Origin: Rebecca billardiae RCC1528
Taxonomy: Eukaryota > Protista > Haptophyta
NCBI GenBank assembly: GCA_965240325.2
Contig: OZ251250.1
Location: 310,001 to 374,000, forward strand
Length of the DNA stretch: 64,000 bases
Direction of reading: 5' to 3'
The translations under genes were made by a program, and so were the position numbers. Under the pieces are notes generated by a model. That model was given only the letters and a program-made list of their open reading frames with translations. It made no database searches and was not told the DNA's origin. Of the stretch, positions 5,448 through 40,714 are shown in pieces. Positions within the stretch are counted from its first letter, which is position 1; each line of letters starts with the position of its first letter.

Positions 5448-5507
<60 letters not shown>

Positions 5508-5693: not shown

Positions 5694-5725
<32 letters not shown>

Positions 5726-12001: not shown

Positions 12002-12035
<34 letters not shown>

Positions 12036-17442: not shown

Positions 17443-17656
17443 TTCGTTCGTTGTCGCGGGCCGTCCGTTCGAAAAAAGCGGCCGTTTCGGCCGCGCCGGC
17501 GCGACGGCGGAATCTTCCGGCTGCAGAATTGGTGAGAAAATGAAATCCGCCGCCGACAAAAGCACCTCCGAAATCAATTCGGGGCTCGGGCCCACGTCCG
17601 TCTTTGGTCCGTCCGCGGAGAGGCGCGCCGCGCAGCCTTGCGCTTGCCAGGTCGAG
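17443..17656. promoter_or_regulatory. Putative bidirectional promoter between divergent genes
   Basis: 214 bp head-to-head gap between ATGs at 17442 (-) and 17657 (+), locally enriched in A/T runs (GAAAAAAG, GAAAATGAAA). Confidence 0.55.
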
Positions 17657-18814: not shown

Positions 18815-18854
<40 letters not shown>

Positions 18855-20214: not shown

Positions 20215-20257
<43 letters not shown>

Positions 20258-20998
20258 GGCGCTCAGACCATAGACCTCGTGTGGCGGCCGGTGGTGGGCG
20301 CGGCGGCGCAAGGCGGCGGCGCGAGCGGCGGCGGGGGCGGCGGCGGGCTGCGCCTCCGCCTCCGCCTCCGCTTCGAGCTCGACGGCGCCACCGGGCTGGT
20401 CGCCGCCATCCGCGTGCTCGACGGCACCGCCAACGGAGCGCCCCTGCTGCCGGCCGCGCTGCGGGGCGTGGCGGGGTGGGCGCGCGACGCGCGGCGCTGG
20501 GCGGGCGGCGGCGCGGCGGCGGGCGCGGCGGCGGGCGCGGCGGCGGCGCGCGGCGGGCCGGCGCCGATGCAGCCGCAGGCGCTGCAGCCGCTCTTCGAGC
20601 GGCTGGCGCGCGTGGTCGAGGCGGCGGTCGGGCCGGCGCCGAGCGGCGCCGCCGACGCGGACGCGGACGCGCCGCCGCCGACGCCGCCGCCCTACTCGCC
20701 GCCGACGCCGCCTGCGCGCGCGCCGCCGCCGCTGCCGCCGACGCCGACGCGCGCGGTGGGGGGCACGCGCGCGCCGCCGCCGGCGGCGCCGGGCGGCGCC
20801 GCCGCCGACGGCGCGCCCCGCCCGAGCGGCCGGCCGCGCGCCGACGCCGAGGCGGAGGTGCGCCGAGCGCAGCCGACCCCTCCCCCTCCTCCTCCTCCCC
20901 CGCCGCGCACGGGCGGCGGCGGCGGCGGCGGCGCTGCTGCGGCTGCGCAGCCCGGCGGTGCGGACGAGCCGTTCGACGCGGACGTGGACGCGGACTGA
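17657..20998 (+). CDS. Hypothetical Ala/Gly-rich protein, probable signal + plastid transit peptide, NTF2/SnoaL-like (DUF2358-like) region
   Basis: MMMAALALALLVALAPRAAAG followed by an Arg-rich segment. VRVRWRG...VELRGTAAFAFDERGRIASH resembles NTF2-like C-terminal strands, and a similar LRFELDGATGLVAAIRV occurs later. Confidence 0.6.
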
Positions 20999-24247: not shown

Positions 24248-27200
24248 TCAGCCGCCCGTGAGGCGGTTGAGCGCGTGCACCAGCAGCCCGACGCTCGTGG
24301 CGAGCAGCTCGTTGATCGCCTCGCCCGTCGCGCCGCCCTGCGAGAGCAGCTTGTCGAAGAGGAAGGGCAGCAGCACGATGAGCGCGAGCAGGATGGGCTC
24401 CTCCAGCCCGAGCGTCTGCACCTCCGCGAACGCCCAGCCGAAGAGCAGGAAGCGCGTCTGCTGCGGGCCGAAGAGCAGCGCGTACGAGGTGGAGAGCAGC
24501 GCGAGCGCCGTGAAGATGGCCCACTGCAGCAGCCACGCGACGCCCAGCCGCGCGCGCGGCGGCAGCGCGAGCGCGCGGCGGAGCGCGCTCGCGCGCCGCC
24601 GCCAGCCCACGCGGCTGCGCGCCTCGACCGCCGCCTCCTCCGCCACCATCCGCGCGTACCAGCGCGCGAGCTCGTCAAAGGAGATGGTGCCGTCGTGGTC
24701 AGCGTCCAGCTCGGCCGCGAGGAGAGCCACGCGCTGCCGGCGCAGCCGGAAGCCGAGCGCGTCGATCAGCACGCCGAACTCGGCGTGGTCGATCGTCCCG
24801 TTGCCGTCGGCGTCGTACGCGTCGAACTTGGCGCGCAGCAGCGCCCGCGTCGGCTCGTCGAGCGCCGTCAGCTCTGCTCCTGCCGCCGCAGAGTCGGCAG
24901 CAGCGGGGGCCGCGCCGTCGGAGCGCTCGGCGCAATCGTCGGCCGGAGCGGTGAGGGAGCGGGCGGGGGCTTCGGTGGCGGGGGAGGCCGCGCCGCGCGG
25001 CCCGGGCCCGATCCGCGGCGCGGCCGCGGCCGCGTCGTCGCCCTCGCCGGGCAGCAGGCGGCCCGGCCTGGGCGGCTTGGGCGGCGGCGGCGACGGCGGC
25101 ACCGAGTGGCGCGGCGAGTGCATGCCGCCGCCGCCGCCGTCGCTGCCGCTGTTGCGCCGCCCCTCGGCGGGGTCGATGGTGGGCGGCGAGCGCACGGGCG
25201 TGCTCACCAGCGCCGCGACCTCCTGCCGCGTCACGCGCGTGTGCACCCGCCCGTCGACCACCCTGCCGCTGCACCGGCCGAAGGAGCCGGACCCACCGGA
25301 CCCGCCGGACGCGCCGGACGCGGCGGACGCGGCGGACTTGGCCGAGGCGGGCGGAGAGGGCCGCGCGCCGCGCGGAGGCGCGGACGGCCGGCGCGCGCGC
25401 TCGAGCGGAGCGCCGCCGATGCCGCCGCCGGCGCTGCCGCCGGTGGAGTCGTACCCGGAGATGGCGAGCACGTTCGCGCCGGGCGAGCGGATCGGGCGCA
25501 CGCTCGACGGCCCCGCCGCGCCGCGCACGCCGCCGGCGCGCGGCAGCGGGACCGCGCGCGGCGCGACCAGCGTGCGGATGGCGGCCAAGTCGGTCACGCG
25601 CACGGGCCCGCCCGCGGCGGCGCTGAGGTCGAGGCCGCGCTCGAGCGAGGCGGCGCGGGCGGCGTGCGCGTCGTCGAGCGCCGCGGCCGTGCGCGGCGTG
25701 AGCGCCGCGGGCTGCGCGCCCGGCGGTGCGGGCTCGGCCGGCGGCGGCGGCGGCCGCACGCGCCGCGACGGCGGCGGCGCGGGCGCGGGCGCGCATGATG
25801 AGGCGGCCGCGGGCACCACGAGCGCGCGCGCGCCGTCGGCCGAGCTGCAGCGGCCGCTGCTGCTGCTCGTCGCGCGCCGGTCGGCGGCGGCGGAGCCGAG
25901 GAGGGCGGCGCGCGGCGAGGGCTCGCACGTCGAGCCGCTGTCGTGCCGCTGCACACACGCGTCCGCCGAGGCGGCGGGCGCGGGCGCGGGCGCCGCCTCC
26001 GGCTCGACCGGGACCGAGGGCTTGGCGCCGCGCGCGCCGCCGAGCGCGCCGAGCATGCTGGGCGGCAGCCCGACGGTGCTTCCGCCGAGCGCGGGCGAGG
26101 CGTCGAGGCGCTGGCGCAGGGTGCTGGGGCCCTTCGCGGAGGGCGCGCCCGCCCCCGCCTGCCCCCGCTGCACCAGCCCGTCCGCCTGCCGCCGCACCGA
26201 CGTGGCGAAGACGCTGCGCTTGAGCCCTCGCTCCGCCTGCTCCGCGCGCAGGAAGGCGGCAAACACGCGCTTCGAGACGGGCGCGGCGCGCCGGCCGTAG
26301 CCCCAGCGGAAGAGCGCGCGGAAGAGGGCGAGCGCGGGCGCGGTGAGCGCGGCGGTGAGCAGCGCGGTCATGATCGCGTGGATCAGGTTGACCGACGTGG
26401 CCGAGCCCTCGGGCGGCGCGGACGTGGAGTGCAGCATGCACGAGAGCAGCAGCCCGAGCATCGCCACGCTCCAGAAGACCTGCGCCAGCTCGGCGCGCTT
26501 CGAGTCCTCCGCGTCGGCGAACCAGATGCCGAGGAGGGAGTGGTCGGTCTGCAGCTTGAGCAGCACGCGGCGCAGCAGCGCCGTCACCATGTGGTCGCCC
26601 GACCGCTCCCGCTTCCCCTCCTTCTTCGCGAGCACGTCGGAGAAGACCTCGGTGTACGCCGCGCGCGCCGTGCGGCCGCGCGCGTACTTCTGCACGGTGA
26701 GCGCCGCGCGCCGCTTCGTCTCGTCCATCAGCTCGTCGAGCGCGTCGAGGCGCGCCTCGAGCCTGTCCGCGAGGTCCTTCGCCGCCTCGGTGTCCAGGTT
26801 GTTCGACTCGCGCGCCACGCGCTCCGCCGCCGTCAGCGCCAGCCCGTCGGGCGCCAGCTCGCCCTCGGCCGCCGGCCGGCCGCCGCCGCCGCCGCCGTCG
26901 AGCAGCCGCTGCAGCCGCTCGCGCCGCCGCCGCGCGTCGTACGCGTCGCGCGCGCCGAACGCGAGGAGGGAGAGCGCGCAGCCGCCCGCCATGCTGAGGA
27001 TGGTGACGAAGATGTACGGGCTCGACTCGAACGTGATGGGCGCGGCGAGGGAGGCCGTGGCCTCCTCCGCGCTCAGCGTGTTGATGTTGAAGCTGCGCAC
27101 GTCGGCCGCCGCCTCGTCGGGCGTGCCTGGCACGGACACGCCCGCAAAGTCGGTCAGGTGCGTGCACGCGCAGGCGCGCGCGAGCGCGCCGTCGGCCGCC

Positions 27201-30200
27201 GGCGCGACCACCGTCTCGCACCCGTCGTCGAGCCACGCGCTCGACCCCTCGTCCCACCACACGCAGCCCCACTCCGCCGCACCGCCGGCCGCGCCGCCGA
27301 GGGCGGGCAGCTCGACCAGCACGCGCCCCTCGTCCGGCAGGTCGGCGATGGTGAGCGCCAGCCCGGCCGACGCCGAGTAGAGCGTGACGGAGAAGACGGG
27401 CGTCACCAGCCCCGACGCGACGGCCGTGCCGTTCGCCTGCGTCGACGGGTCGCCGTGCACGTTGCGCGCCGAGGACCAGAGCACGACGTCGACGCCGCCC
27501 TCGAGCAGCTCGAGCGGCACGCCGCCGAACACGCTCGCCGGCACGCCCACCGAGCCCGCGCCGCCCGGCCCGGGCAGCGTGATGTTGCCGAGCGCGCCCG
27601 CGTCCGCGCGCGCCGCGCTCACGTTGATGGCCTTGCCCACGGCCTCGAAGGGCGCCTCGCCCGGCACGGCGCCGGCGAGCAGCGCGATGGCGAGCGCGCC
27701 CACTGCGCTCGTCGCCGCTCCGCCCACCGCCTCCGCCTCCGCCGCGCTCAGCGGCGCGTCGGCGTCGGCGTCGGCGGAGAGCGCCGCGTCCGCCGCGCGC
27801 AGCAGCGCGGCCGCGGTCGGTCCGTCGACGCCCGACGCGGCCGACTGCGACGCGAGGGCGGCGACCTGCTCGAGGCCCGCGGTCTGCGCGGAGGCGTCGA
27901 ACGCGCCGGGCGGCGCGGATTCGAGCACGGCGGCGAGCGCGGACGCGCTCGCCGCGCGCGCCTCGGCGGTCGGCGCGGACGCCTCCGCCGCGCCCGCCGT
28001 GAGCTCGAGCAGCCGAGCGAGCGTGGCCGAGGCGACGGTGGCGTTGTCGCCGCCCGCGGGCGTCGCGTCGAGCGCGTCGGCGAGGGCGCTCACGAGCTGC
28101 GTGGCGGTCTCGGCCGCGCCCGTCGCGACCGCGGCGTACGCGCGCGTGAGCACCGAGTCGAGCAGCCCCACGCCCTCGCCGGGCGGCGCGACGGCCACGG
28201 CCGTGTGCGCGTGCGCCGCGCCGCCGAGCGCATCTGCCACCGTGACGGTGAGCGTGCGGTTGCCCGCGGGGAGAAGCGCGCTCGCCGAGGCGGAGGCGGA
28301 GGCGGCGCCGAGCGCGGCGACGTCGGCGGCGGCGGCGCCGAGCGGCGCGTGCGAGAACGCGTAGCTCAGCGGCAGGTCCTCCTCGTCGTCCTCCGCCCAC
28401 CCCGCCGCGTACAGCGCAAAGCTCGTCTGCAGCGCCACGCCCGACGCCGGCGCCACCTCGAGCCCTCCGCCGTACGGCGGCCGATTGATCGTGACGCGCA
28501 CCTCCGTGTACGCGGGCTGCGCGCCGCCGAGCACGGCGAGGCGGAACGCGTACGTCGCACCGGGCGCGAGCGCGCCGCTGCGGATCGCGACCGTGCGCAG
28601 CGCCGCGCCCGTCGTGGTCACCCGCTCGCTGTCCGCGAGGTCGAGACCGGCGGGCTCGAGCGCGCCGGCCGCGCCCACGCGCCGCGCGCTCCACTCGTAG
28701 CTGAAGCGCGCCTGCCCCGCCGCCTCGAGCGCGCGCGAGGCGGCATCGAGACGCGCGATGATCGTCAGCCGCTCGGGGTTCCGCTCGAAGGCCGCCGGCC
28801 ACTTGCGCCGCCCGAGCGGCTCGAAGCCGAGCGTGGGCACCGCGCCCGGCACCGCCTCGATCGTCACCGACGCGGCCGCGGGCGCGCGGCCGGGCGCGGA
28901 CACGCGCACGGTGAGCGCGTACACGCCGGGCGGCAGCGTGCCGGGCGCAAGCTCGAAGAGCGCGCCGCTCGCGTTCGCCACGGACGGCTCGAGAGCCACC
29001 GGCTCGAGCGAGCTCGCGTTCGCCACGCTCCACGCGAAGGACAGCGGCGGCGTGCCGCCGTCGGCCGTCGGCGCATCGGGGTCGAATGACGCGGAGGCGT
29101 CGACGGCGAGGCGCAGCGAGCTCGGCACGCGGCGGTCGCCGCCGGCGATCACCGCGCGCAGCGGCTGCCGCGCGACGCGCACGCGCACGCGCGCCGTCGA
29201 CGCCTGCGCGGGCGCCGCCGCCATGCTCGCCGTGAGCGCCAGGTCGTACGCCCAGCCGGCGGCCAGCGAGTGCGGCGGCAGCTGCAGCACCGCGGTGCGC
29301 GCGGACGCGAGGCGCGCGAGCAGCACGTCCGTCGCGGCGGCGAGCTCGTCGGCGGAGGCGCTGCTCGCGTTCGCGCCGCCGCCCACCTGCGCCGCGCCCT
29401 CGAGGGCCCAGCTGAACACCATCGCCGGCTCGAAGCTCGGCGGCCAGCACGGCGCGAGCTCCGCGCGCCCGCTCAGCAGCGTGGGCTCGGAGGCGCGCGC
29501 GCGCAGCTCGGGCGCGCCGTCGATGGCGAGGATCGGGCTGGCGCCGTCGCCGCGCGACACGTGCCACTCGACGGGCGCGGAGGGCACGCCGAGGAAGGAC
29601 GTGACGCGCAGCACGAACACGAACGAGCCGCTCACTCCGAGCTCGGTCGGCGAGGCCGCACCGGGCCCGCCGAGCGAGAGCTGAGGCGTGCGCGCCGGCA
29701 GCGCGCTCAGCCGCGCGTTGAGCGACGCCGCGCGCCCCGAGCGGCTCGGGTCGACGCGCCACTCAAAGGTGGCGGGCCCGATGCCGCCGCGCGACGACGC
29801 GGAGCCGTCGAGCGCGAGCGACGCGCCCGGGCACGCCGAGAGTACCGCCGGGCCCGACACGGCCGCGACAGGCGTCGGGCACTGCACACCGTCGCCGCAC
29901 GGCGCGTCCGCGTCGATGGCGGCGCGCGAGGCCGCAGAGGCTAGGGCGGCGGCGCACGGCGTGCCGCACTGCTCGGGGCGCAGCGCGCCCGCGCGCACGC
30001 CCACCTCCAAGCCGGCGCGCACGAGCGTCGCCGAGCTCAGCCGCGCGACGAGCGTCGAGTCGTCCGCCCAGTAGCACTGCGGCGGCGTAGCCACGGCCGC
30101 GGCCGCGCCGCCGGCGACCAGCGCGACGGTGTCGTCGTCGAGGACGCGCGAGCACTCGCCCATGCCGCTGCCCATGCCCGCGCGGTCGGTCGGCTGCGCG

Positions 30201-32245
30201 TCGAAGCGCAGCACCATCAGCGTCGCCGCGCCGTTGAACGCCACCGCCTCGAGCACGGGCGCGTGCAGGCCGACGAAGGTGAACGCGAGCGCGCCCGCGG
30301 GCGGCGGCGTCGCGGCGGTCGCGGGCGTGAACTGCTGGCCGTTGAGCGAGACGCGGAGCTGCGCGCGGCCCGCGGCGCCGTACCGCGTGGAGACGACAAC
30401 CTCGCCCACTGCGACGCGCGCCGGCGGCTGTGCGGGCGCGTCGCCGAAGCGCACGGCCAGCAGCGCGCCGCCGGCCAGCGCGTCGAAGCCTGCGCCCCCG
30501 ATCGTCACCTCCGTGCCGCCGTTCGCGTCGCCGCTCGCCGGGCTGACGGAGCCGAGGGTGGGCGGGTCGTACGCGAGGAAGGGCAGCGCCGAGGCGGTGG
30601 TCGAGTCGGCGCTGCCGCCGCCAAGCGAGAGCTCGAGCGCCACGCTGCCCGCCGCGCCGCCCAGCGGCGGCGGTAGCACGCAGCGCGCGCGGCTCAGGGT
30701 TGGCGCCGCCGCCGACGGCGGCAGCAGCGTCGCCGCCGCCGCGCAGCCGCCGCCGCCGAGCACGCAGCACAGCTGGCCCTCGCCGTACTCGGCAAAGCCC
30801 GAGCCCACGAGCGTGACCGCCGTGCCGCCGCCCACCGGCCCGCCCGGCGGGCGCAGCTCGAGCACCGACACGGCCGCCATGTCGTACAGCTCAAACGAGA
30901 CGGGGCCGAAGAGCCCGGAGACATCCACGCCCGTGGACGCGCCCACGGCACCGAGGGCGAGGCCGACGGTGTACGCGCCCGCGGCGGAGGGCGCGCCGGA
31001 CGAGGCGGCGGCGGGCATGGCGCAGCGCAGCCGCGCGTCGCTCAGCACCGTCGCGCCCGAGAGCAGCGGGTCGCCACCGTCCCCACCGCCGTCGGCGCGC
31101 GTGAAGGCGCACTGAACCTCGCCGAACTCGCCACCGGCCAGGCTGCCAAAGCCCGCACCCTCGAGCTCGAGCGCCGCGTCGTCCGAGCCGAGCGGCGCGC
31201 CCTCGCGGCTGCCGCTGAGCACGCTCACGCGGATCGCGGGCGGCGGCGGCGGCGGCGGGCTGGGCGGCGGCAGCGGCGGCGGAGAGCTCGGCGGCGGGTG
31301 CGGCGGTGGGCCCGGCGGCGGCGATGGCGGTGGCGATGGCGGTGGCGGCGGTGGCGAGCTGGGCGGTGGTGACGGAGGCGAGCTCGGCGGCGGGCTCGGT
31401 GGCGCCGGCGGCGGGAACGGCTCCGTGCGCGGCGGCGGCGGCGGTGTCGGCGGCACCGGCGGCGCGCGCGGCGGCGGCGCGCGCGGCGGCGGCGGTGGCG
31501 GTGGCGTGGGCGGCGGTGTTGGCGGCGTGGTCGGCGGCTCGCTCGGCGGCGTGGTCGGCGGAGGCGGCGGAGGCGGCGAGGGCGGGTTGGGGGACGAAGG
31601 CGGAGAGGGGCTCGGCGGCGGACTCGGCGGAGGCGGGCTCGGCGGCGGGCTCGGCGGCGGACTCGGCGGCGCCGGCGGCGGGAACGGCTCCGTGCGCGGC
31701 GGCGGCGGCAGCGAGGGTGGCGGGCTCGGCGGCGGCGGCGTAGGCGGCGGCGAGGGCGGGGGCATCGGCGGCGGTGTGCCAGGCGGCGGACTGGGCGGCG
31801 GGTGCGGCGGCGGCGCGTGCGGCGGCAGATTCGGCGGCGGCATTGGTGACGAGCTCGGCGGCGCGCTCGGCGGATCACGCGGCGGAGGCAGCGGAGGCGG
31901 CGAGGGCGGGCTTGGCGGTGGGGTTGGTGGCGGGCTGGGTGGCGAGCTCGGCGGCGGCGGGCTCGGCGGCGGGCTCGGCGGCGGGCTCGGCGGCGCCGGC
32001 GGCGGGAACGGCTCGGTGCGCGGCGGCGGCGGCGGCGAGGGCGGCGCACTCGGCGGCGGCGGGCGAGGCGGCGGCGAGGGTGGCAGCGACGGTGGCGGCG
32101 GCATCGGCGGTGGCGAGGGCGGCGGCGAGGGCGGCGGCAGAGGCGGCGCGTGCGGCGGCGGTGGCGGCGGCCGCCAGGGCGGCGACGCCGGGGGCGTGCC
32201 GGGTGGTGGCGGCGGCGGCAAGGGCGGCGGGCTCGGTGGCTGGCT

Positions 32246-32278
<33 letters not shown>

Positions 32279-35200
32279 CGGGCTCGGCGGCGCAGGCGGC
32301 GGGAACGGCTCCGCGCGAGGCGGCGGCGGCAGGGCCGGCGGCGGGCTCGGCGGCGGCGGGCGCGGCGGCGGGCGCGGCGGCGGCTGCGGCGGCGAGGACG
32401 GCGGTGGCGCCGGAGGAGGCGCCGGCGGCGGCGCGCTCGGTGGCGCGCTCGGCGGCGCGCTCGGCGGCGGTGCGGGCGGCGCGCTCGGCGGCACGCTCGG
32501 CGGCGGGCTCGGCGGCGGCGGGCTCGGCGGCGGGATCGGCGGCGACGGCGGCGGGAACGGCTGCGTGCGCGGCGGCGGCGGCGGTGTCGGTGGCGGGCTC
32601 GGCGACGGCGGCGGCAGCGGAGGGCCCGAAGGCGGTGGCGGTGGCGGAGGGAGTGGCGGCCGCGCCGTCGGTGGGAGCGGCGGCGGCGGCGGCGCGGAGG
32701 GCGGGAAGCTCGGCGGCGGCGAGGGCGGCGGGGCGGGCGGCGGTGGCGGTGGCGGCGAGGGCGGCGGCGAGGGCGGCGAGCTCGGCGGCGAGCTCGGCGG
32801 CGGGCTGGGCGGCGGGCTGGGCGGGCTGGGCGGTGGGAACGGCAGAACGCGCGGCGGTGGCGGCGGCTGCAGAGGCGGGCTGGGCGGCGGCGCGCTGGGC
32901 GGCGGGCTCGGCGGTGCGCTCGGTGGCGGCGGCGGGTGCGGCGGCGGATGCAGCGGCGGCGCGCGCGGCGGGCTGGGCGGCGGGCTCGTTGTTGGTGGCG
33001 GGCTGGGCGGCGGGCTCGGCGGCGCGCTGGGTGGCGAGCGCGGCGGCGGGGTCGGCGGCGGGCGCGGTGGCGGCGGCGACGGAGGCGGCGAGGGCGGCGG
33101 GCTGGGCGGCGGAGGGGGCGGGCGCAGCGGTGGCGGTGACGGGGGCGGGACGGGGGGGGGGCTCGGAGGCGAGCCGGGCGGCGGTGCCGAGGGCGGTGCC
33201 GACGGCGGTGCCGAGGGCGGGGGGCTCGGTGGCGGGCTCGGCGGCGGCGGGCTGGGCGGCGGCGACGGCGGCGGGCTCGGCGGCGGGCTGGGTGGCGGCG
33301 ATGGCGGTGGCGGGCTGGGCGGTGGGATGGGCGGCGGGCTGGGCGGCGGGCTGGGCGGCGCGCGCGGTGGCGGAGGCGACGGAGGAGGCGCGGGGGGCGG
33401 GCTAGGAGGCGGGCTCGGCGGTGGGCTCGGCGGCGGTGGGCTCGGCGGTGGCGACGGCGGCGGTGACGGCGGCAGAGAGGGCGGTGGTGATGGCGGTGGC
33501 GACGGCGGTGGCGAGGGAGGCGGCGACGGCGGCGGCGACGGCGGTGGCGGCGAGGGTGGCGGGCTCGGCGGCGGGCTCGGCGGCGGGCTCGGCGGCGGCG
33601 AGGGCGGCGGTGACGGCGGTGGGCTCGGCGGCGGCAAAGGTGGCCGCGAGGGCGGCGGCGAGGGCGGCGGCGAGGGCGGCGGCGAGGGCGGCGGGCTCGG
33701 CGGCGGTGACGGCGGTGGGCTCGGCGGCGGCGCGGGCGGTGGCGAGGGCGGCGGCGAGGGCGGTGGGCTTGGGGGCGGCGAGGGCGGCGGCGGGCTGGGC
33801 GGTGGGCTGGGCGGCGGGTGCGGCGGCGGGCTGGGCGGCGGGTGCGGCGGCGGGTGCGGCGGCGGCGAGGGCGGCGGCGAGGGCGGCGGCACCGGCGGTG
33901 GAGACGGCGGCGGCAGAGGCGGCGGGCTTGGTGGGGGTCTCGGCGGCGGGCTCGGCGGCGGGGAGGGCGGCGGGCCTGGGGGCGGGCTCGGGGGCGGCGA
34001 TGGCGGCGGCGATGGCGGAGGCGATGGCGGCGGCGACGGGGGCGGCGAGGGCGGCGGAGTCGGCGGCGGGCTCGGTGGCGGCGAGGGCGGCGGGCTGGGT
34101 GGCGGTGAGGGCGGCGGGCTCGGCGGGGGCGAGGGTGGCGGCGTTGGCGGCGGCGAGGGAGGGGGCACCGGCGGCGGCGAGGGTGGTGGCGAAGGCGGCG
34201 GCCTGGGCGGCGGGCTGGGTGGCGGCGACGGAGGTGGCGAGGGCGGCGGGCTTGGTGGCGGTGATGGCGGCGGCGGGCTCGGAGGCGGGCTCGGAGGCGG
34301 GGTGGGCGGCGGGCTGGGCGGTGGCGACGGTGGTGGTGGCGACGGTGGTGGCGAGGGCGGCGGGCTGGGAGGTGGCGCCGGCGGTGGCGAGGGCGGCGGG
34401 CTGGGAGGCGGCGAGGGCGGTGGCGATGGTGGTGGGCTCGGCGGCGGGCTCGGCGGCGGCGGGCTGGGCGGCGGGCTGGGCGGCGGCGATGGCGGCGGGG
34501 AGGGCGGTGGGCTGGGCGGCGGCGGGCTCGGCGGCGGGCTCGGCGGCGGGCTCGGCGGTGGCGAGGGCGGCGGACTTGGGGGCGGCGAGGGCGGCGGGCT
34601 CGGCGGTGGCGAGGGCGGCGGAATTGGGGGCGGCGAGGGCGGCGGGCTCGGCGGCGGGCTTGGCGGCGGCGAGGGCGGCGGGCGCGGCGGTGGCGAGGGC
34701 GGCGGCAAGGGCGGCGGAATCGGCGGCGGGCTCGGTGGCGGCGATGGCGGCGGCCTGGGTGGTGGCGAGGGCGGCGGGCTCGGTGGTGGTGACGGTGGCG
34801 GCGAGGGCGGCGGAATCGGCGGTGGGCTCGGTGGTGGCGAGGGCGGCGGGGAGGGCGGTGGTGACGGCGGCGGGCTCGGTGGCGGCGAGGGTGGTGGCGA
34901 GGGCGGCGGGCTGGGAGGCGGCGAGGGTGGCGGGCTCGGTGGCGGCCTGGGTGGCGGCGAGGGCGGCGGGCTGGGAGGCGGCGCGGGTGGCGGGCTCGGC
35001 GGCGGGCTCGGCGGCGGCGAGGGCGGCGGGTTCGGTGGTGGCGAGGGTGGCGGCGAGGGCGGCGGTGTCGGCGGCGGGCTCGGCGGCGGGCTCGGCGGCG
35101 GCGAAGGTGGCGGCGATGGCGGCGGCGGGCTCGGAGGCGGGCTCGGAGGCGGGGTCGGCGGCGGGCTGGGCGGTGGCGACGGCGGTGGTGGCGATGGTGG

Positions 35201-38200
35201 TGGCGAGGGCGGCGGGCTGGGAGGTGGCGCCGGCGGTGGCGAGGGCGGCGGGCTGGGAGGCGGCGAGGGCGGTGGCGATGGTGGTGGGCTCGGCGGCGGG
35301 CTCGGCGGCGGCGGGCTGGGCGGTGGGCTGGGCGGCGGCGACGGCGGCGGGGAGGGCGGTGGGCTGGGCGGTGGCGGGCTCGGCGGCGGGCTCGGCGGCG
35401 GGCTCGGCGGTGGCGAGGGCGGCGGACTTGGGGGTGGCGAGGGCGGCGGGCTCGGCGGTGGCGAGGGCGGCGGACTTGGGGGCGGCGAGGGCGGCGGGCT
35501 CGGCGGCGGGCTCGGCGGCGGCGAGGGCGGCGGGCGCGGCGGTGGCGAGGGCGGCGGCGAGGGCGGCGGCAAGGGTGGCGGCGACGGTGGCGGCGACGGC
35601 GGCGGGGTCGGCGGCGGGCTTGGCGGTGGCGATGGCGGCGGCGGGCTCGGCGGCGGGCTCGGAGGCGGTGATGGCGGCGGGCTGGGCGGTGGCGACGGTG
35701 GCGGCGGTGATGGCGGCGGACTGGGCGGCGGCGATGGCGGAGGCGACGGCGGCGGGCTCGGCGGCGGGCTCGGCGGCGGCGGGCTGGGCGGTGGGCTCGG
35801 CGGCGGCGACGGCGGCGGAGACGGCGGCGGGCTGGGCGGTGGCGGGCTCGGTGGCGGGCTCGGCGGCGGGCTCGGTGGTGGCGAGGGCGGCGGACTCGGT
35901 GGCGGCGTTGGCGGCGGCGAGGGCGGCGGGCTTGGCGGTGGCGAAGGCGGCGGGCGTGGTGGTGGCGAGGGCGGCGGCGAGGGCGGCGGGCTCGGCGGTG
36001 GGCTGGGTGGCGGGCTGGGCGGCGGCAAGGGCGGCGGCGAGGGCGGCGGGCTCGGCGGCGGGCTCGGCGGCGGCGAGGGCGGCGGGCTCGGTGGTGGCGA
36101 GGGCGGCGGCGAGGGCGGCGGTGTGGGCGGTGGACTCGGCGGCGGGCTCGGCGGCGGGCTCGGTGGTGGCAAGGGTGGTGGGCTCGGCGGGGGCGACGGG
36201 GGTGAGCTGGGCGGTGGCGACGGCGGCGGGGATGGCGGCGGCGGACTCGGAGGCGGGCTCGGAGGCGGGGACGGCGGCGGGCTGGGCGGTGGCGACGGCG
36301 GCGGCGGTGATGGCGGCGGGCTGGGCGGTGGCGAGGGCGGCGGCGAGGGCGGCGGGCTCGGCGGCGGGCTCGGCGGCGGCGAGGGCGGCGGGCTCGGTGG
36401 TGGCGAGGGCGGCGGCGAGGGCGGCGGTGTGGGCGGTGGACTCGGCGGCGGGCTCGGCGGCGGGCTCGGTGGTGGCAAGGGTGGTGGGCTCGGCGGGGGC
36501 GACGGAGGTGGGCTGGGCGGTGGCGACGGCGGCGGGGATGGCGGCGGCGGACTCGGAGGCGGGCTCGGAGGCGGGGACGGCGGCGGGCTGGGCGGTGGCG
36601 ACGGCGGCGGCGGTGATGGCGGCGGGCTGGGCGGCGGCGAGGGCGGTGGCGACGGCGGCGGACTCGGCGGCGGGCTCGGCGGTGGCGGGCTGGGCGGTGG
36701 GCTGGGTGGCGGCGACGGCGGCGGGGAGGGCGGTGGACTGGGCGGTGGCGGGCTCGGTGGCGGACTCGGCGGCGGGCTCGGCGGTGGCGAGGGCGGCGGA
36801 CTTGGGGGCGGCGAGGGCGGCGGCGAGGGCGGCGGGCTCGGTGGCGGCGAAGGTGGCGGGCACGGTGGTGGCGAGGGCGGCGGCGAGGGCGGCGGCGAGG
36901 GCGGCGGCGATGGCGGCGGCGACGGCGGCGGGGTCGGCGGCGGGCTTGGCGGCGGCGATGGCGGCGGCGGGCTCGGAGGCGGGCTCGGAGGCGGGGATGG
37001 CGGCGGGCTGGGCGGTGGCGACGGTGGCGGCGGTGATGGCGGCGGGCTGGGCGGCGGCGAGGGCGGTGGCGACGGCGGCGGACTCGGCGGCGGGCTCGGC
37101 GGCGGCGGGCTGGGCGGCGGGCTGGGCGGCGGCGACGGCGGCGGGGAGGGCGGCGGGCTGGGCGGTGGCGGGCTCGGTGGCGGGCTCGGCGGCGGGCTCG
37201 GCGGTGGCGAGGGCGGCGGACTTGGGGGCGGCGAGGGCGGCGGCGACGGCGGCGGGGTCGGCGGAGGGCTTGGCGGCGGCGATGGCGGCGGCGGGCTCGG
37301 AGGCGGGCTCGGAGGAGGGGACGGCGGCGGGCTGGGCGGTGGCGACGGTGGCGGTGGTGATGGCGGTGGGCTTGGCGGCGGCGATGGTGGAGGCGACGGC
37401 GGCGGGTTCGGCGGTGGGCTCGGTGGCGGCGGGCTGGGCGGTGGGCTGGGCGGCGGCCACGGCGGCGGGAAGGGTGGCGGGCTGGGCGGCGGTGGGCTCG
37501 GTGGCGGGCTCGGCGGCGGGCTTGGTGGTGGCGAGGGCGGCGGACTCGGTGGCGGCGAGGGCGGCGGCGAGGGCGGCGGGCTTGGCGGCGGCGACGGTGG
37601 CGGGCGAGGTGGTGGCGAGGGCGGCGGCGAGGGCGGTGGGCTCGGCGGCGGGCTCGGCGGCGGGCTGGGCGGCGGGCTGGGTGGCGGCGAGGGCGGCGGG
37701 CTCGGCGGCGGCGAGGGTGGCGGCGACGGCGGTGGGGACGGCGGGGGCGAGGGCGGCGGGGAGGGTGGCGGCGAGGGTGGCGGCGAGGGCGGCGGGCTGG
37801 GCGGCGGCGGGCTCGGCGGCGGGCTCGGGGGAGGGGAGGGCGGCGGGCTGGGCGGCGGCGACGGCGGTGGCGGCGATGGCGGCGGCGATGGCGGCGGGCT
37901 GGGAGGCGGCGTCGGTGGCGGAGAGGGCGGCGGGCTGGGCGGCGGGGAGGGCGGTGGCGAGGGCGGTGGGCTCGGCGGCGGGCTCGGCGGCGGCGACGGC
38001 GGCGGGCTCGGTGGCGGTGTCGGTGGCGGCGGGCTGGGCGGCGGTGAAGGTGGCGGGCTGGGCGGCGGCGACGGCGGTGGGCTCGGCGGCGGCGACGGCG
38101 GTGGGCTCGGTGGCGGAGACGGCGGTGGGCTGGGCGGAGGTGGGCTCGGCGGTGGGCTCGGGGGCGGTGATGGCGGCGGGCTTGGCGGCGGCGACGGCGG

Positions 38201-40714
38201 AGGCGGTGACGGCGGTGGCGAAGGCGGAGGGCTCGGCGGAGGCGACGGCGGCGGGGCCGGCGGCGGCGGGCTGGGCGGCGGGCTGGGCGGCGGCGAGGGC
38301 GGCGGGCTGGGCGGCGGCGAGGGCGGTGGGCTCGGTGGCGGCGAGGGCGGCGGGCTCGGCGGCGGGCTTGGGGGCGGCGAGGGCGGCGGGCTCGGCGGCG
38401 GCGACGGCGGAGGCGGCGAGGGCGGTGGCGAGGGCGGGGGGCTCGGCGGAGGCAATGGCGGCGGGGCCGGCGGCGGCGGGCTGGGCGGCGGGCTGGGCGG
38501 CGGCGAGGGCGGTGGGCTGGGCGGCGGCGAGGGCGGGGGGCTTGGGGGTGGCGAGGGCGGGGGGCTCGGCGGCGGGCCCGGCGGTGGGCTCGGGGGTGGC
38601 GAGGGCGGCGGGCTCGGCGGCGGGCTCGGCGGCGGCGACGGCGGCGGGCTCGGTGGCGGTGACGGTGGCGGGCTGGGCGGAGGTGGGCTCGGCGGCGGGC
38701 TCGGGGGCGGTGATGGCGGCGGGCTTGGCGGCGGCGACGGCGGAGGCGGTGACGGCGGTGGCGAGGGCGGAGGACTCGGCGGAGGCGAAGGCGGCGGGGT
38801 CGGCGGCGGCGGGCTGGGCGGCGGGCTGGGCGGCGGCGAGGGCGGTGGGCTGGGCGGCGGCGAGGGCGGTGGGCTCGGTGGCGGCGATGGCGGCGGGCTG
38901 GGCGGCGGACTCGGTGGTGGCGAGGGTGGCGGACTTGGGGGCGGCGATGGCGGCGGGCTCGGCGGCGGCGAGGGTGGTGGCGGGGATGGAGGCGGGCTGG
39001 GCGGCGGGCTTGGCGGTGGCGAGGGTGGTGGGCTTGGCGGGGGCGAGGGCGGTGGTGACGGCGGGCTGGGCGGCGGGAACGGCTCCGTGCGCGGCGGCGG
39101 TGGCGGCAGCGGCGGTGGCGAGGGCGGCGGCGAGGGCGGTGGCGGGGATGGCGGCGGGCTGGGCGGCGCACCGGGCGGAGGCGACGGTGGCGGGCTCGGC
39201 GGGCTCGGCGGCGGGCTCGGCGGCGGGCTCGGGGGCGGGCTTGATGGCGGGGGGCTGGGCGGCGGACCCGGCGGAGGCGAGGGAGGCGGGCTCGGCGGGC
39301 TCGGTGGCGGGCTCGGTGGCGGGGCGGGCGGCGGGCTCGGCGGCGGGGCCGGGCTCGGCGGGATGTACCCCGAGAGGCTGAGGATGTACAGCGCGCCGGC
39401 TTCGTCGTTGCCCTCGTCGTCGCCCGGCGCGCCCGTCGCCACCTGCACGACGCCGTCGCCGTTCAGGTCGCCAAGGAGCCGCGTGCCCGTGCCGAAGACG
39501 TCGTTGGTGTCGAGCGCCGCGTCGAGGCCGGCGAGGCCGCTGCTGATCCTGTCGGTGTGCAGCACGGTGCCGTCGGTGTTGAGGTAGAGCAGGAAGAGCG
39601 CGCCAGTGTCCCCGAGCTCGAGAGCGCCCACCATCGCGTCCGGCACCGTGTCGTTGTTCAGGTCGCCCACCCCGGCGCAGCCGTTGTACGAGAACTGCCC
39701 GCCCGCCACGAGGCCGTCGACGCCGCCGTCGGTGCTCGAGAGCTTCGTCTGCGCCTTCACGCTGCCGTCCGTGTTGAGGAAGACCACGTACGCCGCGCCC
39801 GTGTCGTCGCCGCCCGTGTCGTCGCCGGACGCGGCTATCAGCACGTCCATCACGCCGTCGCCGTCCACGTCGCCGAGCGCGCCGATGGTGGAGCCCAGGA
39901 GGTCGTAGTCGGACAGGCTGCCGAACCCGCCTGTCTGGTGCGCGATCGTGGCGTCCGACTTCACCGTGCCGTCCGTGTTCATGAAGAGCACGAACACGGC
40001 GCCGCGGCCGAGCCCGCCGCTGGCCAGGGTCGAGGCGCCCACCATCAGGTCGATCACGCCGTCGCCGTCGAGGTCGCCGAGGTTGGCGATGCCGGCGCCG
40101 AACTGGCTGAACGCCGCGAGGGTGACGCTGAGGCCGCCCACGCCGAAGGAGATGCGCTGCTCCGCCTTCACCGTGCCGTCCGCGTTGAGCAAGAGGATGT
40201 ACAGCGAGCCAAACCCGCCCGCGTCAAACTCGGTGGCGCCGACGGCCACGTCCGGGACGCCGTCGCCGTCGAGGTCGCCGAGCTGGCAGGCGGCGTTGCC
40301 AAACCGCGCGTCGTTGTTCAGGGCGGCCTTGCCGCCCGTGCCGCTCGCGATCTTCGTCTCGGCCGTGACCGCGCCCGCGCTGCTCAGGTAGAGCACGTAC
40401 GCGGCGCCGCGCATGTCGCCGCCCGTGGCGTCGTACGGGGCGGTGACCAGGATCTCGGTCACGCCGTTCCCGTCGAGGTCACCGAGCCTGGCGGTGGCCA
40501 CCCCGAAGCCGTCGTCCTTCGCGATCGCGCCCTTGCCATTCAAACCGGACGCAATCTTGATCTCCCCGACCACCGGCTGCTGCGCCTGCGCCGATGCCGC
40601 GGGCAGCCACGCCAGCGAGAGCAGCAGAGCGGCGAGCGCGGTGGGCGAGGCGACGCGGCTGGGCCACGGCCACCACGCCGGGCGATGCATCCGCGTCCGG
40701 TACGCTCGCGCCAT
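24248..40714 (-). CDS. Giant (~5,488 aa) polycystin-1-like cell-surface protein: signal peptide, 6 FG-GAP repeats, Ser-Pro stalk, IPT/TIG, REJ, GAIN/GPS, 5 TM, IQ motif, 2 EF-hands
   Basis: One uninterrupted ORF. Six GD(L/V)(D/N)xxx-type FG-GAP repeats; PPGGPVGGGTAVTLVGSGF and SPASGDANGGTEVTIGG (IPT); INRPPYGGGLEVAPASGVALQTSF..DLPLSYAF (REJ); CVWWD...WLDDGC...CACTHLTDFA (GPS); VQKYARGRTAR (IQ); DADGNGTIDHAEF and DADHDGTISFDEL (EF-hands). Start could be 40714 or 40690. Confidence 0.88.
31235..39360 (-). repeat. ~8.1 kb coding tandem array of 12-bp (Ser-Pro-Pro-Pro) units with higher-order repeats
   Basis: Continuous GGC/GGT-rich array on the + strand, translating to SPPP/SPPPP on the - strand. 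Confidence 0.95.

What the first reader, a model, noticed from the sequence alone, without database searches (positions are those of the whole stretch)
24248..40714. Channel-less polycystin-1-like mega-receptor with an integrin-alpha-type head on an extensin stalk
Seen: one ~5,490-aa ORF ordered signal peptide, FG-GAP propeller, Ser-Pro stalk, IPT, REJ, GPS and five TM helices. The helices carry PKD1-like signatures (DHSLLGIWF before TM2, AP...LFR at TM3, AW...SYALLFG at TM4, EEP after TM5), and a stop follows shortly after. Known: animal PKD1 has REJ-GPS-TM1-PLAT-TM2-5 and then a 6-TM TRPP module. Here PLAT and the channel module appear absent. Inference: a modular adhesion or mechanosensory receptor joining integrin-like, plant-extensin-like and polycystin parts, possibly partnering a separately encoded TRPP/PKD2 channel. 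REJ/GPS proteins exist in protists, but I do not recognise this combination. This is the best candidate for an undescribed system in the window.
Basis: partly seen in the sequence, partly recalled or inferred. Interest (0 to 1): 0.9.

Follow-up and report, generated by a model that had tools for sequence, protein, structure and literature searches.

The report
Giant stalked half-polycystin-1 surface receptor
A very GC-rich alga, probably a pavlovophyte haptophyte, has one intronless 16.5-kb gene for a 5,488-residue membrane protein: a calcium-binding propeller head on a proline-serine rod that could reach 0.8 micrometre, on a self-cleaving base folded like the front half of polycystin-1, with its own calcium-sensing motifs and no ion channel.

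Summary
Window 24248-40714 (minus strand) is one uninterrupted 5,488-codon reading frame. Third-position GC is 0.96-0.99 throughout the head and base and about 0.83 in the stalk.

The domain order is:
- signal peptide
- six-repeat FG-GAP propeller
- 2,710-residue Ser-Pro3 stalk
- IPT/TIG, REJ and a complete GPS motif (HL|T)
- five TM helices

PLAT and a polycystin channel domain are absent. A convergent GH20 gene 723 bp downstream leaves no room for channel exons.

One is a canonical IQ motif in the loop where PLAT sits in polycystin-1. The other is an EF-hand pair in the next cytosolic loop.

An AlphaFold model of the base has human polycystin-1 TM1-TM5 as its best solved match among 48,161 chains (Z 16.1). 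Sequence and profile searches do not detect polycystin-1.

The TIG-REJ-GPS-5TM base occurs in unannotated proteins of Diacronema lutheri and Pavlovales sp. CCMP2436, without the head or stalk.

The nearest characterised analogue is Chlamydomonas MST3, a polyproline rod on a PKD2-like anchor.

This scan had already found paralogues with the same layout elsewhere in this genome. No RNA evidence could be obtained, so function is inferred. I class it as a new variant of a known kind.

The parts
24248..40714 (-). Complete coding sequence, 5,488 codons plus stop, with no intron-like stretch
   Evidence: ORF. ATG position. GC3 is 0.96-0.99 from the ATG to the stop and about 0.6 before it.
40589..40714 (-). 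Signal peptide (MARAYRT...LLLSLAWLPAASA|QAQ)
   Evidence: Hydrophobic peak at residues 67-90 of the GTG-numbered ORF. The A-S-A motif before Gln is read from the sequence. The cleavage site is inferred.
39368..40588 (-). FG-GAP beta-propeller head: six 67-69-residue repeats, each with a GDLDGDG-type calcium loop
   Evidence: Pfam FG-GAP 1.4e-24. Six repeats. AlphaFold pLDDT 90, pTM 0.91, 24 strands. Integrin alpha propellers are the best solved fold. Bacterial FG-GAP proteins are the best sequences.
31238..39367 (-). Ser-Pro3 stalk, 2,710 residues, with seven PPPPPR(T/A/V)(E/Q/L)PFPPP punctuation motifs
   Evidence: Composition, 477 SPPP units, and Ser codons split between AGC (253) and TCG (204). 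12-nt period, 665 copies, 68% DNA matches. 1 Tyr, 0 Lys; about 840 nm at 0.31 nm per residue if a polyproline-II helix.
29300..31237 (-). IPT/TIG region
   Evidence: Pfam TIG 1e-12, two stretches. This region matches 25 family proteins, down to E 1e-113.
28088..29299 (-). REJ domain
   Evidence: Pfam REJ 2.3e-45, covering profile positions 39-451 of 452.
27143..28087 (-). Ala-rich helical region plus GPS motif (27143-27265), presumed GAIN domain. The predicted autoproteolysis site HL|T lies between 27155 and 27154.
   Evidence: Pfam GPS, 26.5 bits. The family profile hits the GPS of adhesion GPCRs at 1.5e-6. All four Cys, two Trp and HLT are present. The GAIN fold itself was not modelled.
27014..27154 (-). 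Post-cleavage tethered stalk (TDFAGVSVPGT...INTLS)
   Evidence: Conserved in the family as TDFAGI.VPTS....VNTFS. It aligns to the THLTSF...VPS segment of ADGRF1.
26951..27013 (-). TM1
   Evidence: Hydropathy 2.14. Model helix with pLDDT above 90.
26489..26950 (-). Cytosolic loop 1, 154 residues, helical, with IQ motif VQKYARGRTARAAY at 26654-26695. It occupies the position PLAT has in polycystin-1.
   Evidence: No PLAT hit. Full IQ consensus here, and the IQ core in 14 of the 17 haptophyte-type members checked. The family profile hits the IQ regions of RSP23, Sp17 and myosin V.
26309..26488 (-). TM2 (26423-26488) and TM3 (26309-26395), with the family's invariant His and Arg before TM2 and Pro in TM3
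   Evidence: invariant H242, R257, P310. Model pLDDT 84-95.
24548..26308 (-). Cytosolic loop 2, 587 residues, mostly disordered, ending in an EF-hand pair at 24656-24838
   Evidence: EF-hand_7 1.5e-12. Calmodulin and centrin matches. Both loops carry canonical calcium ligands. pLDDT is below 50 in the rest of the loop.
24251..24547 (-). TM4 (24467-24547), TM5 (24353-24412) and a 34-residue tail with a terminal helix
   Evidence: This end is conserved in 15 homologues, which also stop 30-100 residues after TM5.

Best explanation
This is one gene for a giant type-I-like surface receptor or adhesin, a 'receptor on a pole'.

Shown:
- A signal peptide leads to a calcium-loop FG-GAP propeller.
- The propeller is followed by 2,710 residues of Ser-Pro3.
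- An IPT/TIG-REJ-GPS ectodomain follows, with a complete autoproteolysis motif.
- A five-helix membrane module follows, predicted to fold like polycystin-1 TM1-TM5.
- That module carries a conserved IQ motif in cytosolic loop 1, in place of PLAT, and a calcium-competent EF-hand pair in loop 2.
- The protein ends 34 residues after TM5, with no channel domain.

Inferred mechanism:
- The Ser-Pro3 tract forms a stiff polyproline-II rod, probably hydroxylated and glycosylated, that holds the ligand-binding propeller up to about 0.8 micrometre from the membrane.
- The protein is cleaved at HL|T and stays non-covalently joined.
- Pulling on the rod strains or removes the N-terminal fragment and exposes the conserved tethered peptide to the five-helix bundle.
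- The cytosolic IQ and EF-hand elements tie the state of the base to cytosolic calcium. They may dock on each other, or bind calmodulin or centrin.
- Because the TM6-11 polycystin domain is absent, the protein cannot be the fourth subunit of a TRPP tetramer. Any link to a channel would have to be indirect.
For: One coding unit:
- A continuous frame, uniform GC3 and a non-coding-like leader.
- There is no Met followed by a hydrophobic signal between the stalk and TIG, so the base has no way into the ER by itself in this gene.

Domains.

Fold of the base:
- AlphaFold pLDDT is 85-95 in all ordered parts.
- The top hit among 48,161 chains is 8z6b_A, polycystin-1: Z 16.1, rmsd 2.7 A, 195 residues, chain range 3063-3610. 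All other top-50 rows are EF-hand matches to the EF-hand part.

No channel:
-.
- None of the 41 post-GPS modules from the nearest relatives has PLAT or PKD_channel.
- The homologues I looked up in NCBI and an MMETSP transcript end 31-99 residues after TM5.

Family conservation: TM1, loop 1 with IQ, TM2-3, the EF pair and TM4-5 with the tail are each conserved in 15-23 proteins.

Topology: the positive-inside pattern puts IQ and EF in the cytosol (sequence).

Stalk under protein-level constraint:
- The frame is kept over 8.1 kb at only 68% DNA identity between units.
- Ser is encoded by both AGC and TCG.

Precedents:
- Glycosylated polyproline-II helices span hundreds of nanometres in the Chlamydomonas mastigoneme protein MST3, which is anchored by a PKD2-like domain (PMC11015965).
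- The polycystin-1 tail binds calmodulin, and this is needed for channel activity (PMC4999191).
Against: - No transcript, read or protein evidence was available. No sequencing run was listed.
- Sequence and profile searches against PDB do not detect polycystin-1, so homology of the five helices rests on a predicted fold. The tool notes that helical models can reach a best Z of about 14 by chance.
- The GAIN fold, cleavage, hydroxylation, calcium binding and any IQ-EF contact are all untested.
- The long ORFs in other frames of the stalk show that ORF length there is not evidence by itself.
- The ligand and cellular location are unknown.
Confidence: 0.58

Rival explanations
1. It is a passive structural hair or surface-coat fibril. 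The rod and head form an extracellular filament, for example the fine flagellar hairs described for pavlovophytes (my own knowledge). The REJ-GPS-5TM base is then only its membrane anchor or release point, with no signalling role, much as MST3 anchors mastigonemes.
For: - The rod dominates the protein (2,710 of 5,488 residues).
- MST3 shows that a polyproline rod on a polycystin-family anchor can be a structural ciliary hair.
- GPS cleavage would allow shedding.
- Unchecked notes from this scan report many paralogues with swapped heads in this genome, as expected for a coat.
Against: - The IQ motif, the EF-hand pair and the tethered peptide are conserved across the family, including in head-less and stalk-less members such as D. 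lutheri KAG8462819.1. That is hard to explain for a mere anchor.
- The head keeps six intact calcium loops typical of ligand-binding propellers.
Confidence: 0.22
2. It is a gamete-recognition or sexual agglutinin receptor. The head binds the partner gamete, and the REJ-GPS base triggers a fertilisation-type calcium response, as proposed for sea-urchin REJ proteins and Ectocarpus male-gamete REJ proteins.
For: - REJ-GPS proteins are linked to gamete recognition in sea urchin and are male-gamete-specific candidates in Ectocarpus (PMC4700764).
- Chlamydomonas sexual agglutinins are head-on-rod hydroxyproline-rich glycoproteins (my own knowledge).
- Head swapping among paralogues (unchecked notes) fits fast-evolving recognition molecules.
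Against: - There are no expression data.
- From my own knowledge, sexual cycles are poorly documented in pavlovophytes.
- The architecture alone does not distinguish this from general adhesion or prey and substrate sensing.
Confidence: 0.1
3. It is an artefact or dead gene: an assembly join across a simple repeat that fuses a secreted FG-GAP proline-rich protein gene to a separate REJ receptor gene, or an unexpressed pseudogene.
For: - The 8.1-kb low-complexity repeat is hard to assemble.
- All frames of the repeat are open.
- No reads or RNA could be laid on it.
- Public relatives lack a stalk.
Against: - Head and base are in the same frame across 8.1 kb with no frame slip: each 200-residue window in the core of the stalk is 93-99% Pro plus Ser, and 80-81% in its base-proximal quarter.
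- The repeat units are only 68% identical at the DNA level, which makes collapse or mis-join less likely.
- The base has no start codon or signal peptide of its own here, unlike the D. lutheri head-less member, which has one.
- GC3 stays coding-like to the stop.
- Unchecked notes report several independent loci with the same layout.
Confidence: 0.06

Closest known systems
Polycystin-1 (PKD1) family of animals (PKD1, PKD1L1-3, PKDREJ, sea-urchin REJ proteins)
   Same: - A REJ domain.
- A GPS with HL|T just before TM1, followed by a conserved tethered peptide.
- The same topology: TM1, cytosolic loop, TM2-TM3, long cytosolic loop, TM4-TM5.
- The predicted fold of the five helices superposes on human polycystin-1 residues 3063-3610 (Z 16.1).
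- Calcium and calmodulin regulation also has a precedent in the polycystin-1 tail (PMC4999191).
   Different: - There is no PLAT domain in loop 1. A helical IQ-bearing loop takes its place.
- There is no TM6-11 polycystin channel or TOP domain and no C-terminal coiled coil.
- An EF-hand pair is built into loop 2.
- The membrane part shows no detectable sequence similarity.
- The ectodomain lacks the LRR, C-type lectin and PKD repeats and instead has an FG-GAP head and a Ser-Pro3 rod.
Chlamydomonas reinhardtii MST3 (mastigoneme axial protein) and its seven relatives with partial PKD2-like domains (PMC11015965)
   Same: - A giant algal surface protein with globular N-terminal domains.
- Very long proline-rich polyproline-II rods that span hundreds of nanometres.
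- A polycystin-family membrane anchor at the C terminus.
- A family with swapped extracellular heads.
   Different: - The MST3 anchor is a PKD2-like pore domain lacking S1. It is completed by SIP and assembles with PKD2 into a channel.
- Here the anchor is the other half of the polycystin-1 plan (REJ-GPS plus TM1-5), with no pore domain.
- MST3 is a green-algal protein, whereas this gene is probably from a haptophyte, so the design is probably convergent.
Unannotated pavlovophyte REJ/EF-hand proteins: Diacronema lutheri KAG8459354.1 and KAG8462819.1; Pavlovales sp. CCMP2436 KAJ1636386.1, KAJ1635852.1 and KAJ1633484.1
   Same: - They have the same base, REJ-GPS-TM1-IQ loop-TM2-3-EF pair-TM4-5-short tail, preceded by TIG in the D. 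lutheri members.
- Identity is 35-42% over REJ to TM3.
- These are true family members.
   Different: - None has an FG-GAP head or a long Ser-Pro3 tract.
- KAG8462819.1 puts its own signal peptide directly on the TIG region.
- Many have Cys-rich C-terminal tails, which are absent here.
Adhesion GPCRs (class B2)
   Same: - A long adhesive ectodomain.
- A GPS motif with a T.FA-type tethered peptide. The family profile matches ADGRF1, ADGRG6 and ADGRL3 at E 1e-6 to 1e-3.
- The likely logic is the same: force-dependent exposure of a tethered agonist.
   Different: It has five helices of the polycystin-1 type instead of a seven-helix secretin-like bundle, and no 7tm_2 hit.
Integrin alpha subunits and bacterial FG-GAP repeat proteins
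   Same: - FG-GAP repeats with DxDxDG calcium loops.
- Integrin alpha propellers are the best solved fold (E 1e-15) and the best PDB sequence hits (7e-13).
   Different: - Six predicted blades instead of seven, and every blade has a calcium loop.
- There is no thigh, calf or integrin TM and tail.
- Stand-alone bacterial FG-GAP proteins from marine metagenome genomes are far closer in sequence (E 1e-100 to 1e-149, 38-48% identity).
Plant extensins and algal hydroxyproline-rich glycoproteins
   Same: Ser-Pro3-4 repeats, 477 SPPP units, the classic substrate pattern for prolyl hydroxylation and arabinosylation.
   Different: - With 1 Tyr and 0 Lys in 2,710 residues, there are no Tyr cross-linking motifs.
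- It is membrane-anchored rather than built into a wall.
- Hydroxylation and glycosylation in this organism are untested.

Membership tests
Polycystin-1 (PKD1) family | REJ domain | tested here: met
   PF02010, 2.3e-45, near full length.
Polycystin-1 (PKD1) family | GPS motif with HL|T immediately before TM1 | tested here: met
   PF01825, 26.5 bits against a cut-off of 22.5. CxC.HLT.F is present 47 residues before TM1. Cleavage itself was not tested.
Polycystin-1 (PKD1) family | PLAT domain in the first cytosolic loop | tested here: not met
   No PLAT hit at E<=1. The loop is predicted helical. PLAT is also absent from 41 related post-GPS modules.
Polycystin-1 (PKD1) family | N-terminal five-helix membrane domain (TM1-TM5) | tested here: met
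   The AlphaFold model's top match among 48,161 PDB chains is 8z6b_A residues 3063-3610: Z 16.1, rmsd 2.7 A, 195 residues, 16% identity. This is fold level only; the sequence searches were negative.
Polycystin-1 (PKD1) family | C-terminal six-helix polycystin (TRPP-like) domain with TOP domain | tested here: not met
   No PF08016 hit. The protein ends 34 residues after TM5. The convergent GH20 gene lies 723 bp downstream, and downstream minus-strand ORFs have no Pfam hit.
Polycystin-1 (PKD1) family | C-terminal coiled coil that binds polycystin-2 | tested here: not met
   The tail is 34 residues with one short terminal helix.
Adhesion GPCR (class B2) | GAIN/GPS followed by a seven-helix secretin-type bundle | tested here: not met
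   A GPS is present, but only five helices follow it, there is no 7tm_2 hit, and the fold matches polycystin-1.
Integrin alpha | Seven-bladed FG-GAP propeller followed by thigh and calf domains, a single TM and a GFFKR tail | tested here: not met
   FG-GAP repeats are present, but there are six repeats and 24 strands. The propeller is followed directly by the Ser-Pro stalk.
Extensin / hydroxyproline-rich glycoprotein | Ser-Pro3-5 repeats | tested here: met
   477 SPPP and 54 SPPPP units.
Extensin / hydroxyproline-rich glycoprotein | Tyr-based cross-linking motifs (YXY, VYK) | tested here: not met
   1 Tyr and 0 Lys in the stalk.
Extensin / hydroxyproline-rich glycoprotein | Prolyl hydroxylation and O-arabinosylation or O-galactosylation | not testable with these tools
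   This needs protein chemistry.
MST3-like polyproline-rod polycystin proteins (Chlamydomonas) | PKD2-like pore domain lacking S1, completed by SIP | tested here: not met
   There is no PKD_channel hit, and the fold match is to polycystin-1 TM1-5, not to the pore domain. The comparison is based on PMC11015965.
Pavlovophyte TIG-REJ-GPS-5TM-IQ-EF family (unnamed) | REJ, GPS, five TM with invariant His/Arg before TM2 and Pro in TM3, an IQ-type motif in loop 1, an EF-hand pair before TM4, and an end shortly after TM5 | tested here: met
   Every segment matches 15-23 family proteins at E 1e-7 to 1e-36. See also the alignments, and the Pfam results for homologues.

The most novel reading that the evidence does not exclude
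The TM1-TM5 half of polycystin-1 is an old, self-sufficient receptor module that existed, and still works, without a TRPP channel half. In pavlovophytes it would be a force-gated, GAIN-cleaved sensor. Its output would be an intramolecular calmodulin-like switch, in which the EF-hand pair of loop 2 docks on the IQ helix of loop 1 in a calcium-dependent way. It would be driven by a micrometre-long polyproline lever with exchangeable heads. If so, these genes would give a simple system for asking what the poorly understood N-terminal membrane domain of polycystin-1 actually does.
Probability: 0.2. Interest if true: 0.85.

Novelty: new variant of a known kind. Interest (0 to 1): 0.62.

Why it matters
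From my own knowledge, the role of the five N-terminal helices of polycystin-1 in the kidney-disease protein is still poorly understood. They have only been studied fused to the channel-like half.

Here the same predicted fold stands alone in a conserved protist family. A calmodulin-type motif pair replaces PLAT, which suggests this half is an independent functional unit. That makes its function testable without a channel attached.

The gene also extends the design of a polyproline rod on a polycystin-family anchor. That design is known from the green-algal mastigoneme protein MST3. Here it appears in a probable haptophyte with a different anchor, which points to convergent evolution of micrometre-scale surface probes.

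For pavlovophyte cell biology, the gene gives candidate genes for surface or flagellar hairs and for contact sensing.

All functional statements are inferences from sequence and predicted structure.

Tried and rejected
- Homologue search, first attempt. The word-indexed search on the C-terminal region of the full-length protein found nothing. The likely causes are the length band of 3,018-9,604 aa and low-complexity words. The exhaustive HMMER search then found 2,210 relatives. A later word-indexed search added only six proteins.
- Polycystin-1 by sequence. phmmer of the base and a 21-sequence family profile against all PDB sequences found only EF-hand, GPS and IQ matches.
- Fold searches that failed. 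Foldseek against PDB and the ESM Atlas shape search on the base model were swamped by EF-hand proteins. Only the Foldseek-independent VIA search saw the membrane bundle.
- Protein-language-model search of TM1-TM3. It gave only sub-threshold leads: haptophyte hypotheticals, and a PLAT/GPS cluster at 0.57.
- RNA and read evidence. Two run searches listed nothing. One-transcript status remains untested.
- Channel exons downstream. Rejected: minus-strand ORFs between 14000 and 24300 have no channel-type Pfam hit, and the neighbouring gene is a convergent GH20.
- Stalk or head hidden upstream of public homologues. Rejected for P0003 and for D. lutheri KAG8462819.1, which has its own signal peptide on the TIG region.
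- Species identification. An exact look-up of the GH20 protein failed. 'Pavlovophyte' rests only on the taxa of the nearest named homologues.
- Literature. Searches for protist REJ or polycystin work were mostly noise from 'polycystine' radiolarians. A description of pavlovophyte flagellar hairs could not be retrieved, so that point is marked as my own knowledge.

Full report
**1. What is in the sequence**

The minus strand carries one ORF, 24248..40852.

Codon-position GC shows where coding begins. The 46 codons upstream of the ATG have GC of 0.59-0.63 at all three positions. From the ATG onwards GC3 is 0.96-0.99 in the head, the TIG-REJ-GPS region, the TM parts and also the disordered cytosolic loop. 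It is 0.83 in the stalk, where CCA and CCT codons are used. Outside the stalk no 50-codon window drops below GC3 0.8, so nothing looks like an intron. The flanks are 0.60-0.66 GC.

The window as a whole is 60-87% GC. Its other genes are ordinary nuclear genes: TruD-type pseudouridine synthase, RING-PHD, CCCH zinc finger, MAP65 and GH20.

**2. Domain anatomy**

Residue numbers below count from the GTG at 40852. Subtract 46 for ATG numbering.

- **Signal peptide:** 47-88, a hydrophobic core followed by A-S-A|Q.
- **Head:** 89-495. Pfam FG-GAP scores 1.4e-24. There are six repeats of 67-69 residues, each with a GDLDGDG-type loop.
- **Stalk:** 496-3205.
- **IPT/TIG:** 1e-12.
- **REJ:** 2.3e-45.
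- **GPS:** 26.5 bits, above Pfam's cut-off. It has the complete C..W..W..C..CxC.HL|T.F pattern.
- **TM helices:** five hydrophobic helices at 4614-4634, 4789-4810, 4820-4848, 5436-5462 and 5481-5500.
- **Tail:** 34 residues.

Arg-rich segments follow TM1 and TM3 and precede TM4. This gives an N-out topology with both long loops in the cytosol.

Neither PLAT nor PKD_channel is found even at E<=1.

The finding's description does not mention two features. The first is an EF-hand pair at 5339-5399 (EF-hand_7, 1.5e-12). Both of its 12-residue loops carry canonical ligands (DADGNGTIDHAE and DADHDGTISFDE). The second is a perfect IQ motif, VQKYARGRTARAAY, at 4720-4733 in loop 1. This is the loop that holds PLAT in polycystin-1.

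**3. Is the gene really channel-less?**

The stop codon is followed 723 bp later by the 3' end of a convergent GH20 hexosaminidase gene (21512..23524, plus strand; 1.2e-47). None of the minus-strand ORFs further downstream has a channel-type Pfam hit. The only one with any hit belongs to a separate MAP65 gene.

The relatives behave the same way. The NCBI gene models from Diacronema lutheri and Pavlovales sp. CCMP2436 that I looked up, and one MMETSP transcript, end 31-99 residues after TM5. Their C-terminal segments align to this one. The 41 post-GPS modules from the nearest relatives contain no PLAT and no PKD_channel, and ten of them contain an EF-hand pair. The absence of the channel half is therefore a family trait and not a truncation.

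**4. Is the five-helix module polycystin-1-like?**

By sequence the link cannot be shown. phmmer of the last 975 residues and a profile of 21 family members against every PDB sequence hit only calmodulin-like proteins, the GPS of adhesion GPCRs (1.5e-6) and IQ regions (RSP23, Sp17, myosin V).

By predicted fold it is. AlphaFold2 with the family alignment gave pLDDT 85-95 for TM1, TM2-3, the EF pair and TM4-5, and below 50 for the long loop. A Foldseek-independent comparison with 48,161 representative PDB chains ranked 8z6b chain A, human polycystin-1, first. The match has Z 16.1, rmsd 2.7 A, 195 aligned residues and 16% identity, and covers chain residues 3063-3610. From my own knowledge of the UniProt topology, that range is TM1 to TM5 and stops before S1 of the channel-like half.

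Every other row in the top 50 is an EF-hand protein aligned to the EF-hand part (Z 12.5 or less). No other membrane bundle appears. The tool warns that helical models can reach a best Z of about 14 by chance, so Z alone is not proof. The decisive point is that the one chain expected beforehand from the REJ-GPS context came out first and over exactly the expected range.

I therefore accept 'folds like polycystin-1 TM1-5'. Common descent is likely but not demonstrated.

**5. The family**

An exhaustive HMMER search with REJ to TM3 found 2,210 proteins at E<=1e-3. The best are 35-42% identical. The named ones are D. lutheri KAG8459354.1 and KAG8462819.1, and Pavlovales sp. CCMP2436 KAJ1636386.1, KAJ1635852.1 and KAJ1633484.1. 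All are annotated only as hypothetical, REJ-domain or EF-hand-domain proteins. On that basis the organism is probably a pavlovophyte haptophyte. An exact look-up of the neighbouring GH20 protein found nothing, so the species is not identified.

Each piece of the base is separately conserved in 15-23 proteins: TM1, loop 1, TM2-3, the EF pair, and TM4-5 with the tail. The alignment shows the following conserved elements:

- the tethered peptide TDFAGI.VPTS....VNTFS
- the IQ core [IVL]Q...RG...R in most members
- an invariant His (HTLLGLWF) and Arg before TM2
- an invariant Pro in TM3
- AW, Y...FG and EEP around TM4-5

More distant REJ-GPS-5TM proteins without EF hands exist in cryptophyte-like sequences with filamin repeats (Rhodomonas) and in Phytophthora.

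None of the 159 family proteins I held matches the FG-GAP head. None has more than 13 SPPP units. D. lutheri KAG8462819.1 has its own signal peptide directly in front of the TIG region, and unrelated genes lie upstream. The base is therefore an autonomous receptor, and head plus stalk are an N-terminal addition in this gene.

**6. The head**

AlphaFold with 33 homologues gives pLDDT 90 and pTM 0.91, with 24 strands, i.e. six four-stranded blades.

The closest solved folds are integrin alpha propellers (E 1e-15, TM about 0.6, rmsd 5-8 A). Integrin alpha-4 is the best PDB sequence hit (7e-13).

Within the length band the search can see, stand-alone bacterial FG-GAP proteins are far closer. These come from Planctomycetota, Actinomycetia, Phycisphaerae and Cytophagales metagenome genomes. 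They score E 1e-100 to 1e-149 at 38-48% identity and have the same six-repeat layout.

'Integrin-alpha-type' is therefore fair for the repeat type only.

**7. The stalk**

The stalk is 2,710 residues, 73% Pro and 20% Ser. It has 477 SPPP and 54 SPPPP units, 1 Tyr and 0 Lys.

At the DNA level it is a 12-nt periodic array of about 665 units that are only 67-68% alike. Ser is encoded almost equally by AGC (253) and TCG (204), which cannot interconvert by a single synonymous change. The frame never slips. Each 200-residue window in the core of the stalk is 93-99% Pro plus Ser, and 80-81% in its base-proximal quarter. This argues for selection on the protein and against a recent expansion or a collapsed assembly. 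The repeat is open in all frames, so ORF length alone proves nothing.

At 0.31 nm per residue a polyproline-II helix would measure about 840 nm. That such rods exist is shown by MST3 of the Chlamydomonas mastigoneme (PMC11015965).

Seven copies of a PPPPPR(T/A/V)(E/Q/L)PFPPP motif punctuate the rod. Six of them are spaced 84-108 residues apart in the base-proximal quarter. They could be kinks or processing sites.

**8. How it most likely works**

Shown: the architecture, the topology inferred from charge, the conservation, and the fold prediction.

Inferred:
- The head binds a ligand far from the membrane.
- The GAIN-type module is cleaved at HL|T.
- Tension transmitted by the rod strains or removes the N-terminal fragment.
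- The conserved tethered peptide then acts on the five-helix bundle.
- The cytosolic IQ helix and EF-hand pair read, or set, a calcium-dependent state. They could do this by binding each other or by recruiting calmodulin or centrin.

Polycystin-1 itself needs calmodulin binding in its tail for channel activity (PMC4999191), so calcium feedback on this receptor class has a precedent.

The TM6-11 domain is absent. From my own knowledge, that domain is the part of polycystin-1 that enters the PC1/PC2 tetramer.

The rival readings are a passive hair or coat anchor like MST3, a gamete-recognition molecule (REJ proteins in sea urchin and Ectocarpus; PMC4700764), and an assembly or pseudogene artefact. 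They are weighed in their own section of this report.

**9. Earlier notes of this scan**

Notes on other pieces of this genome describe paralogues with FG-GAP, RCC1 or LRR heads on Ser-Pro rods over the same REJ-GPS-5TM base. Several follow-up reports reach the same family reading. They are AI notes and not independent evidence. I used them only as the lead that this locus is one member of a multigene family.

Within my window there is a single copy, not a tandem array.

**10. Verdict**

The gene is a new architectural variant within the REJ-GPS polycystin-1-like receptors. Its closest characterised analogue in design is MST3. No expression or biochemical evidence exists.

Noticed in passing
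window 21512-23524 (+): An intronless 670-aa GH20 beta-hexosaminidase gene (Glyco_hydro_20, 1.2e-47) converges on the receptor gene. Its stop lies 723 bp from the receptor's stop.
   Followed up: partly
window 31238-39367 (-), protein residues 587, 2667, 2761, 2845, 2944, 3052, 3141 (GTG numbering): Seven copies of a PPPPPR(T/A/V)(E/Q/L)PFPPP motif interrupt the Ser-Pro3 rod. Six of them are spaced 84-108 residues apart in the base-proximal quarter, where the repeat is also less regular. They could be kinks, hinges or processing sites.
   Followed up: no
window 39368-40588 (-): The nearest sequence relatives of the head (38-48% identity, E down to 1e-149) are stand-alone bacterial FG-GAP proteins from marine metagenome genomes, with the same six-repeat layout. 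I did not resolve whether this reflects gene transfer or convergence on an idealised repeat. The search could only see proteins of 225-715 aa.
   Followed up: partly
L002 10001-16472 (Diacronema lutheri JAGTXO010000018.1): KAG8462819.1 is a head-less, stalk-less family member. Its signal peptide sits directly on TIG-REJ-GPS-5TM with IQ and EF. The raw ORF departs from the annotated protein near TM5, so this gene has an intron there, unlike the window's gene.
   Followed up: partly
P0001, P0008, P0009, P0021 C termini: Many family members end in Cys-rich tails (for example ...FACCCSCCSGGK), which are candidate palmitoylation sites. The window's protein has no Cys in its tail.
   Followed up: no
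P0046, P0098, P0157 (Logan/ENA; one cluster member from Rhodomonas salina): Cryptophyte-like proteins combine 9-14 filamin repeats and GEX2-type Ig domains with REJ-GPS and five TM helices, without PLAT, EF hands or a channel. This is a second protist lineage with a channel-less five-helix REJ receptor.
   Followed up: partly
window 14426-17146 (-), 2890-6018 (-), 11526-13181 (+), 49917-51749 (-): The neighbouring long ORFs are ordinary nuclear genes: MAP65/ASE1 (4.8e-13), TruD-type pseudouridine synthase (1.6e-33), a RING plus PHD finger protein, and a CCCH zinc-finger protein. There is no second receptor copy in this window.
   Followed up: partly
window 17030-20998 (+) and 18034-20151 (-): This stretch is 81-85% GC and has long ORFs on both strands but no Pfam hit. 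I did not establish what, if anything, it encodes.
   Followed up: no
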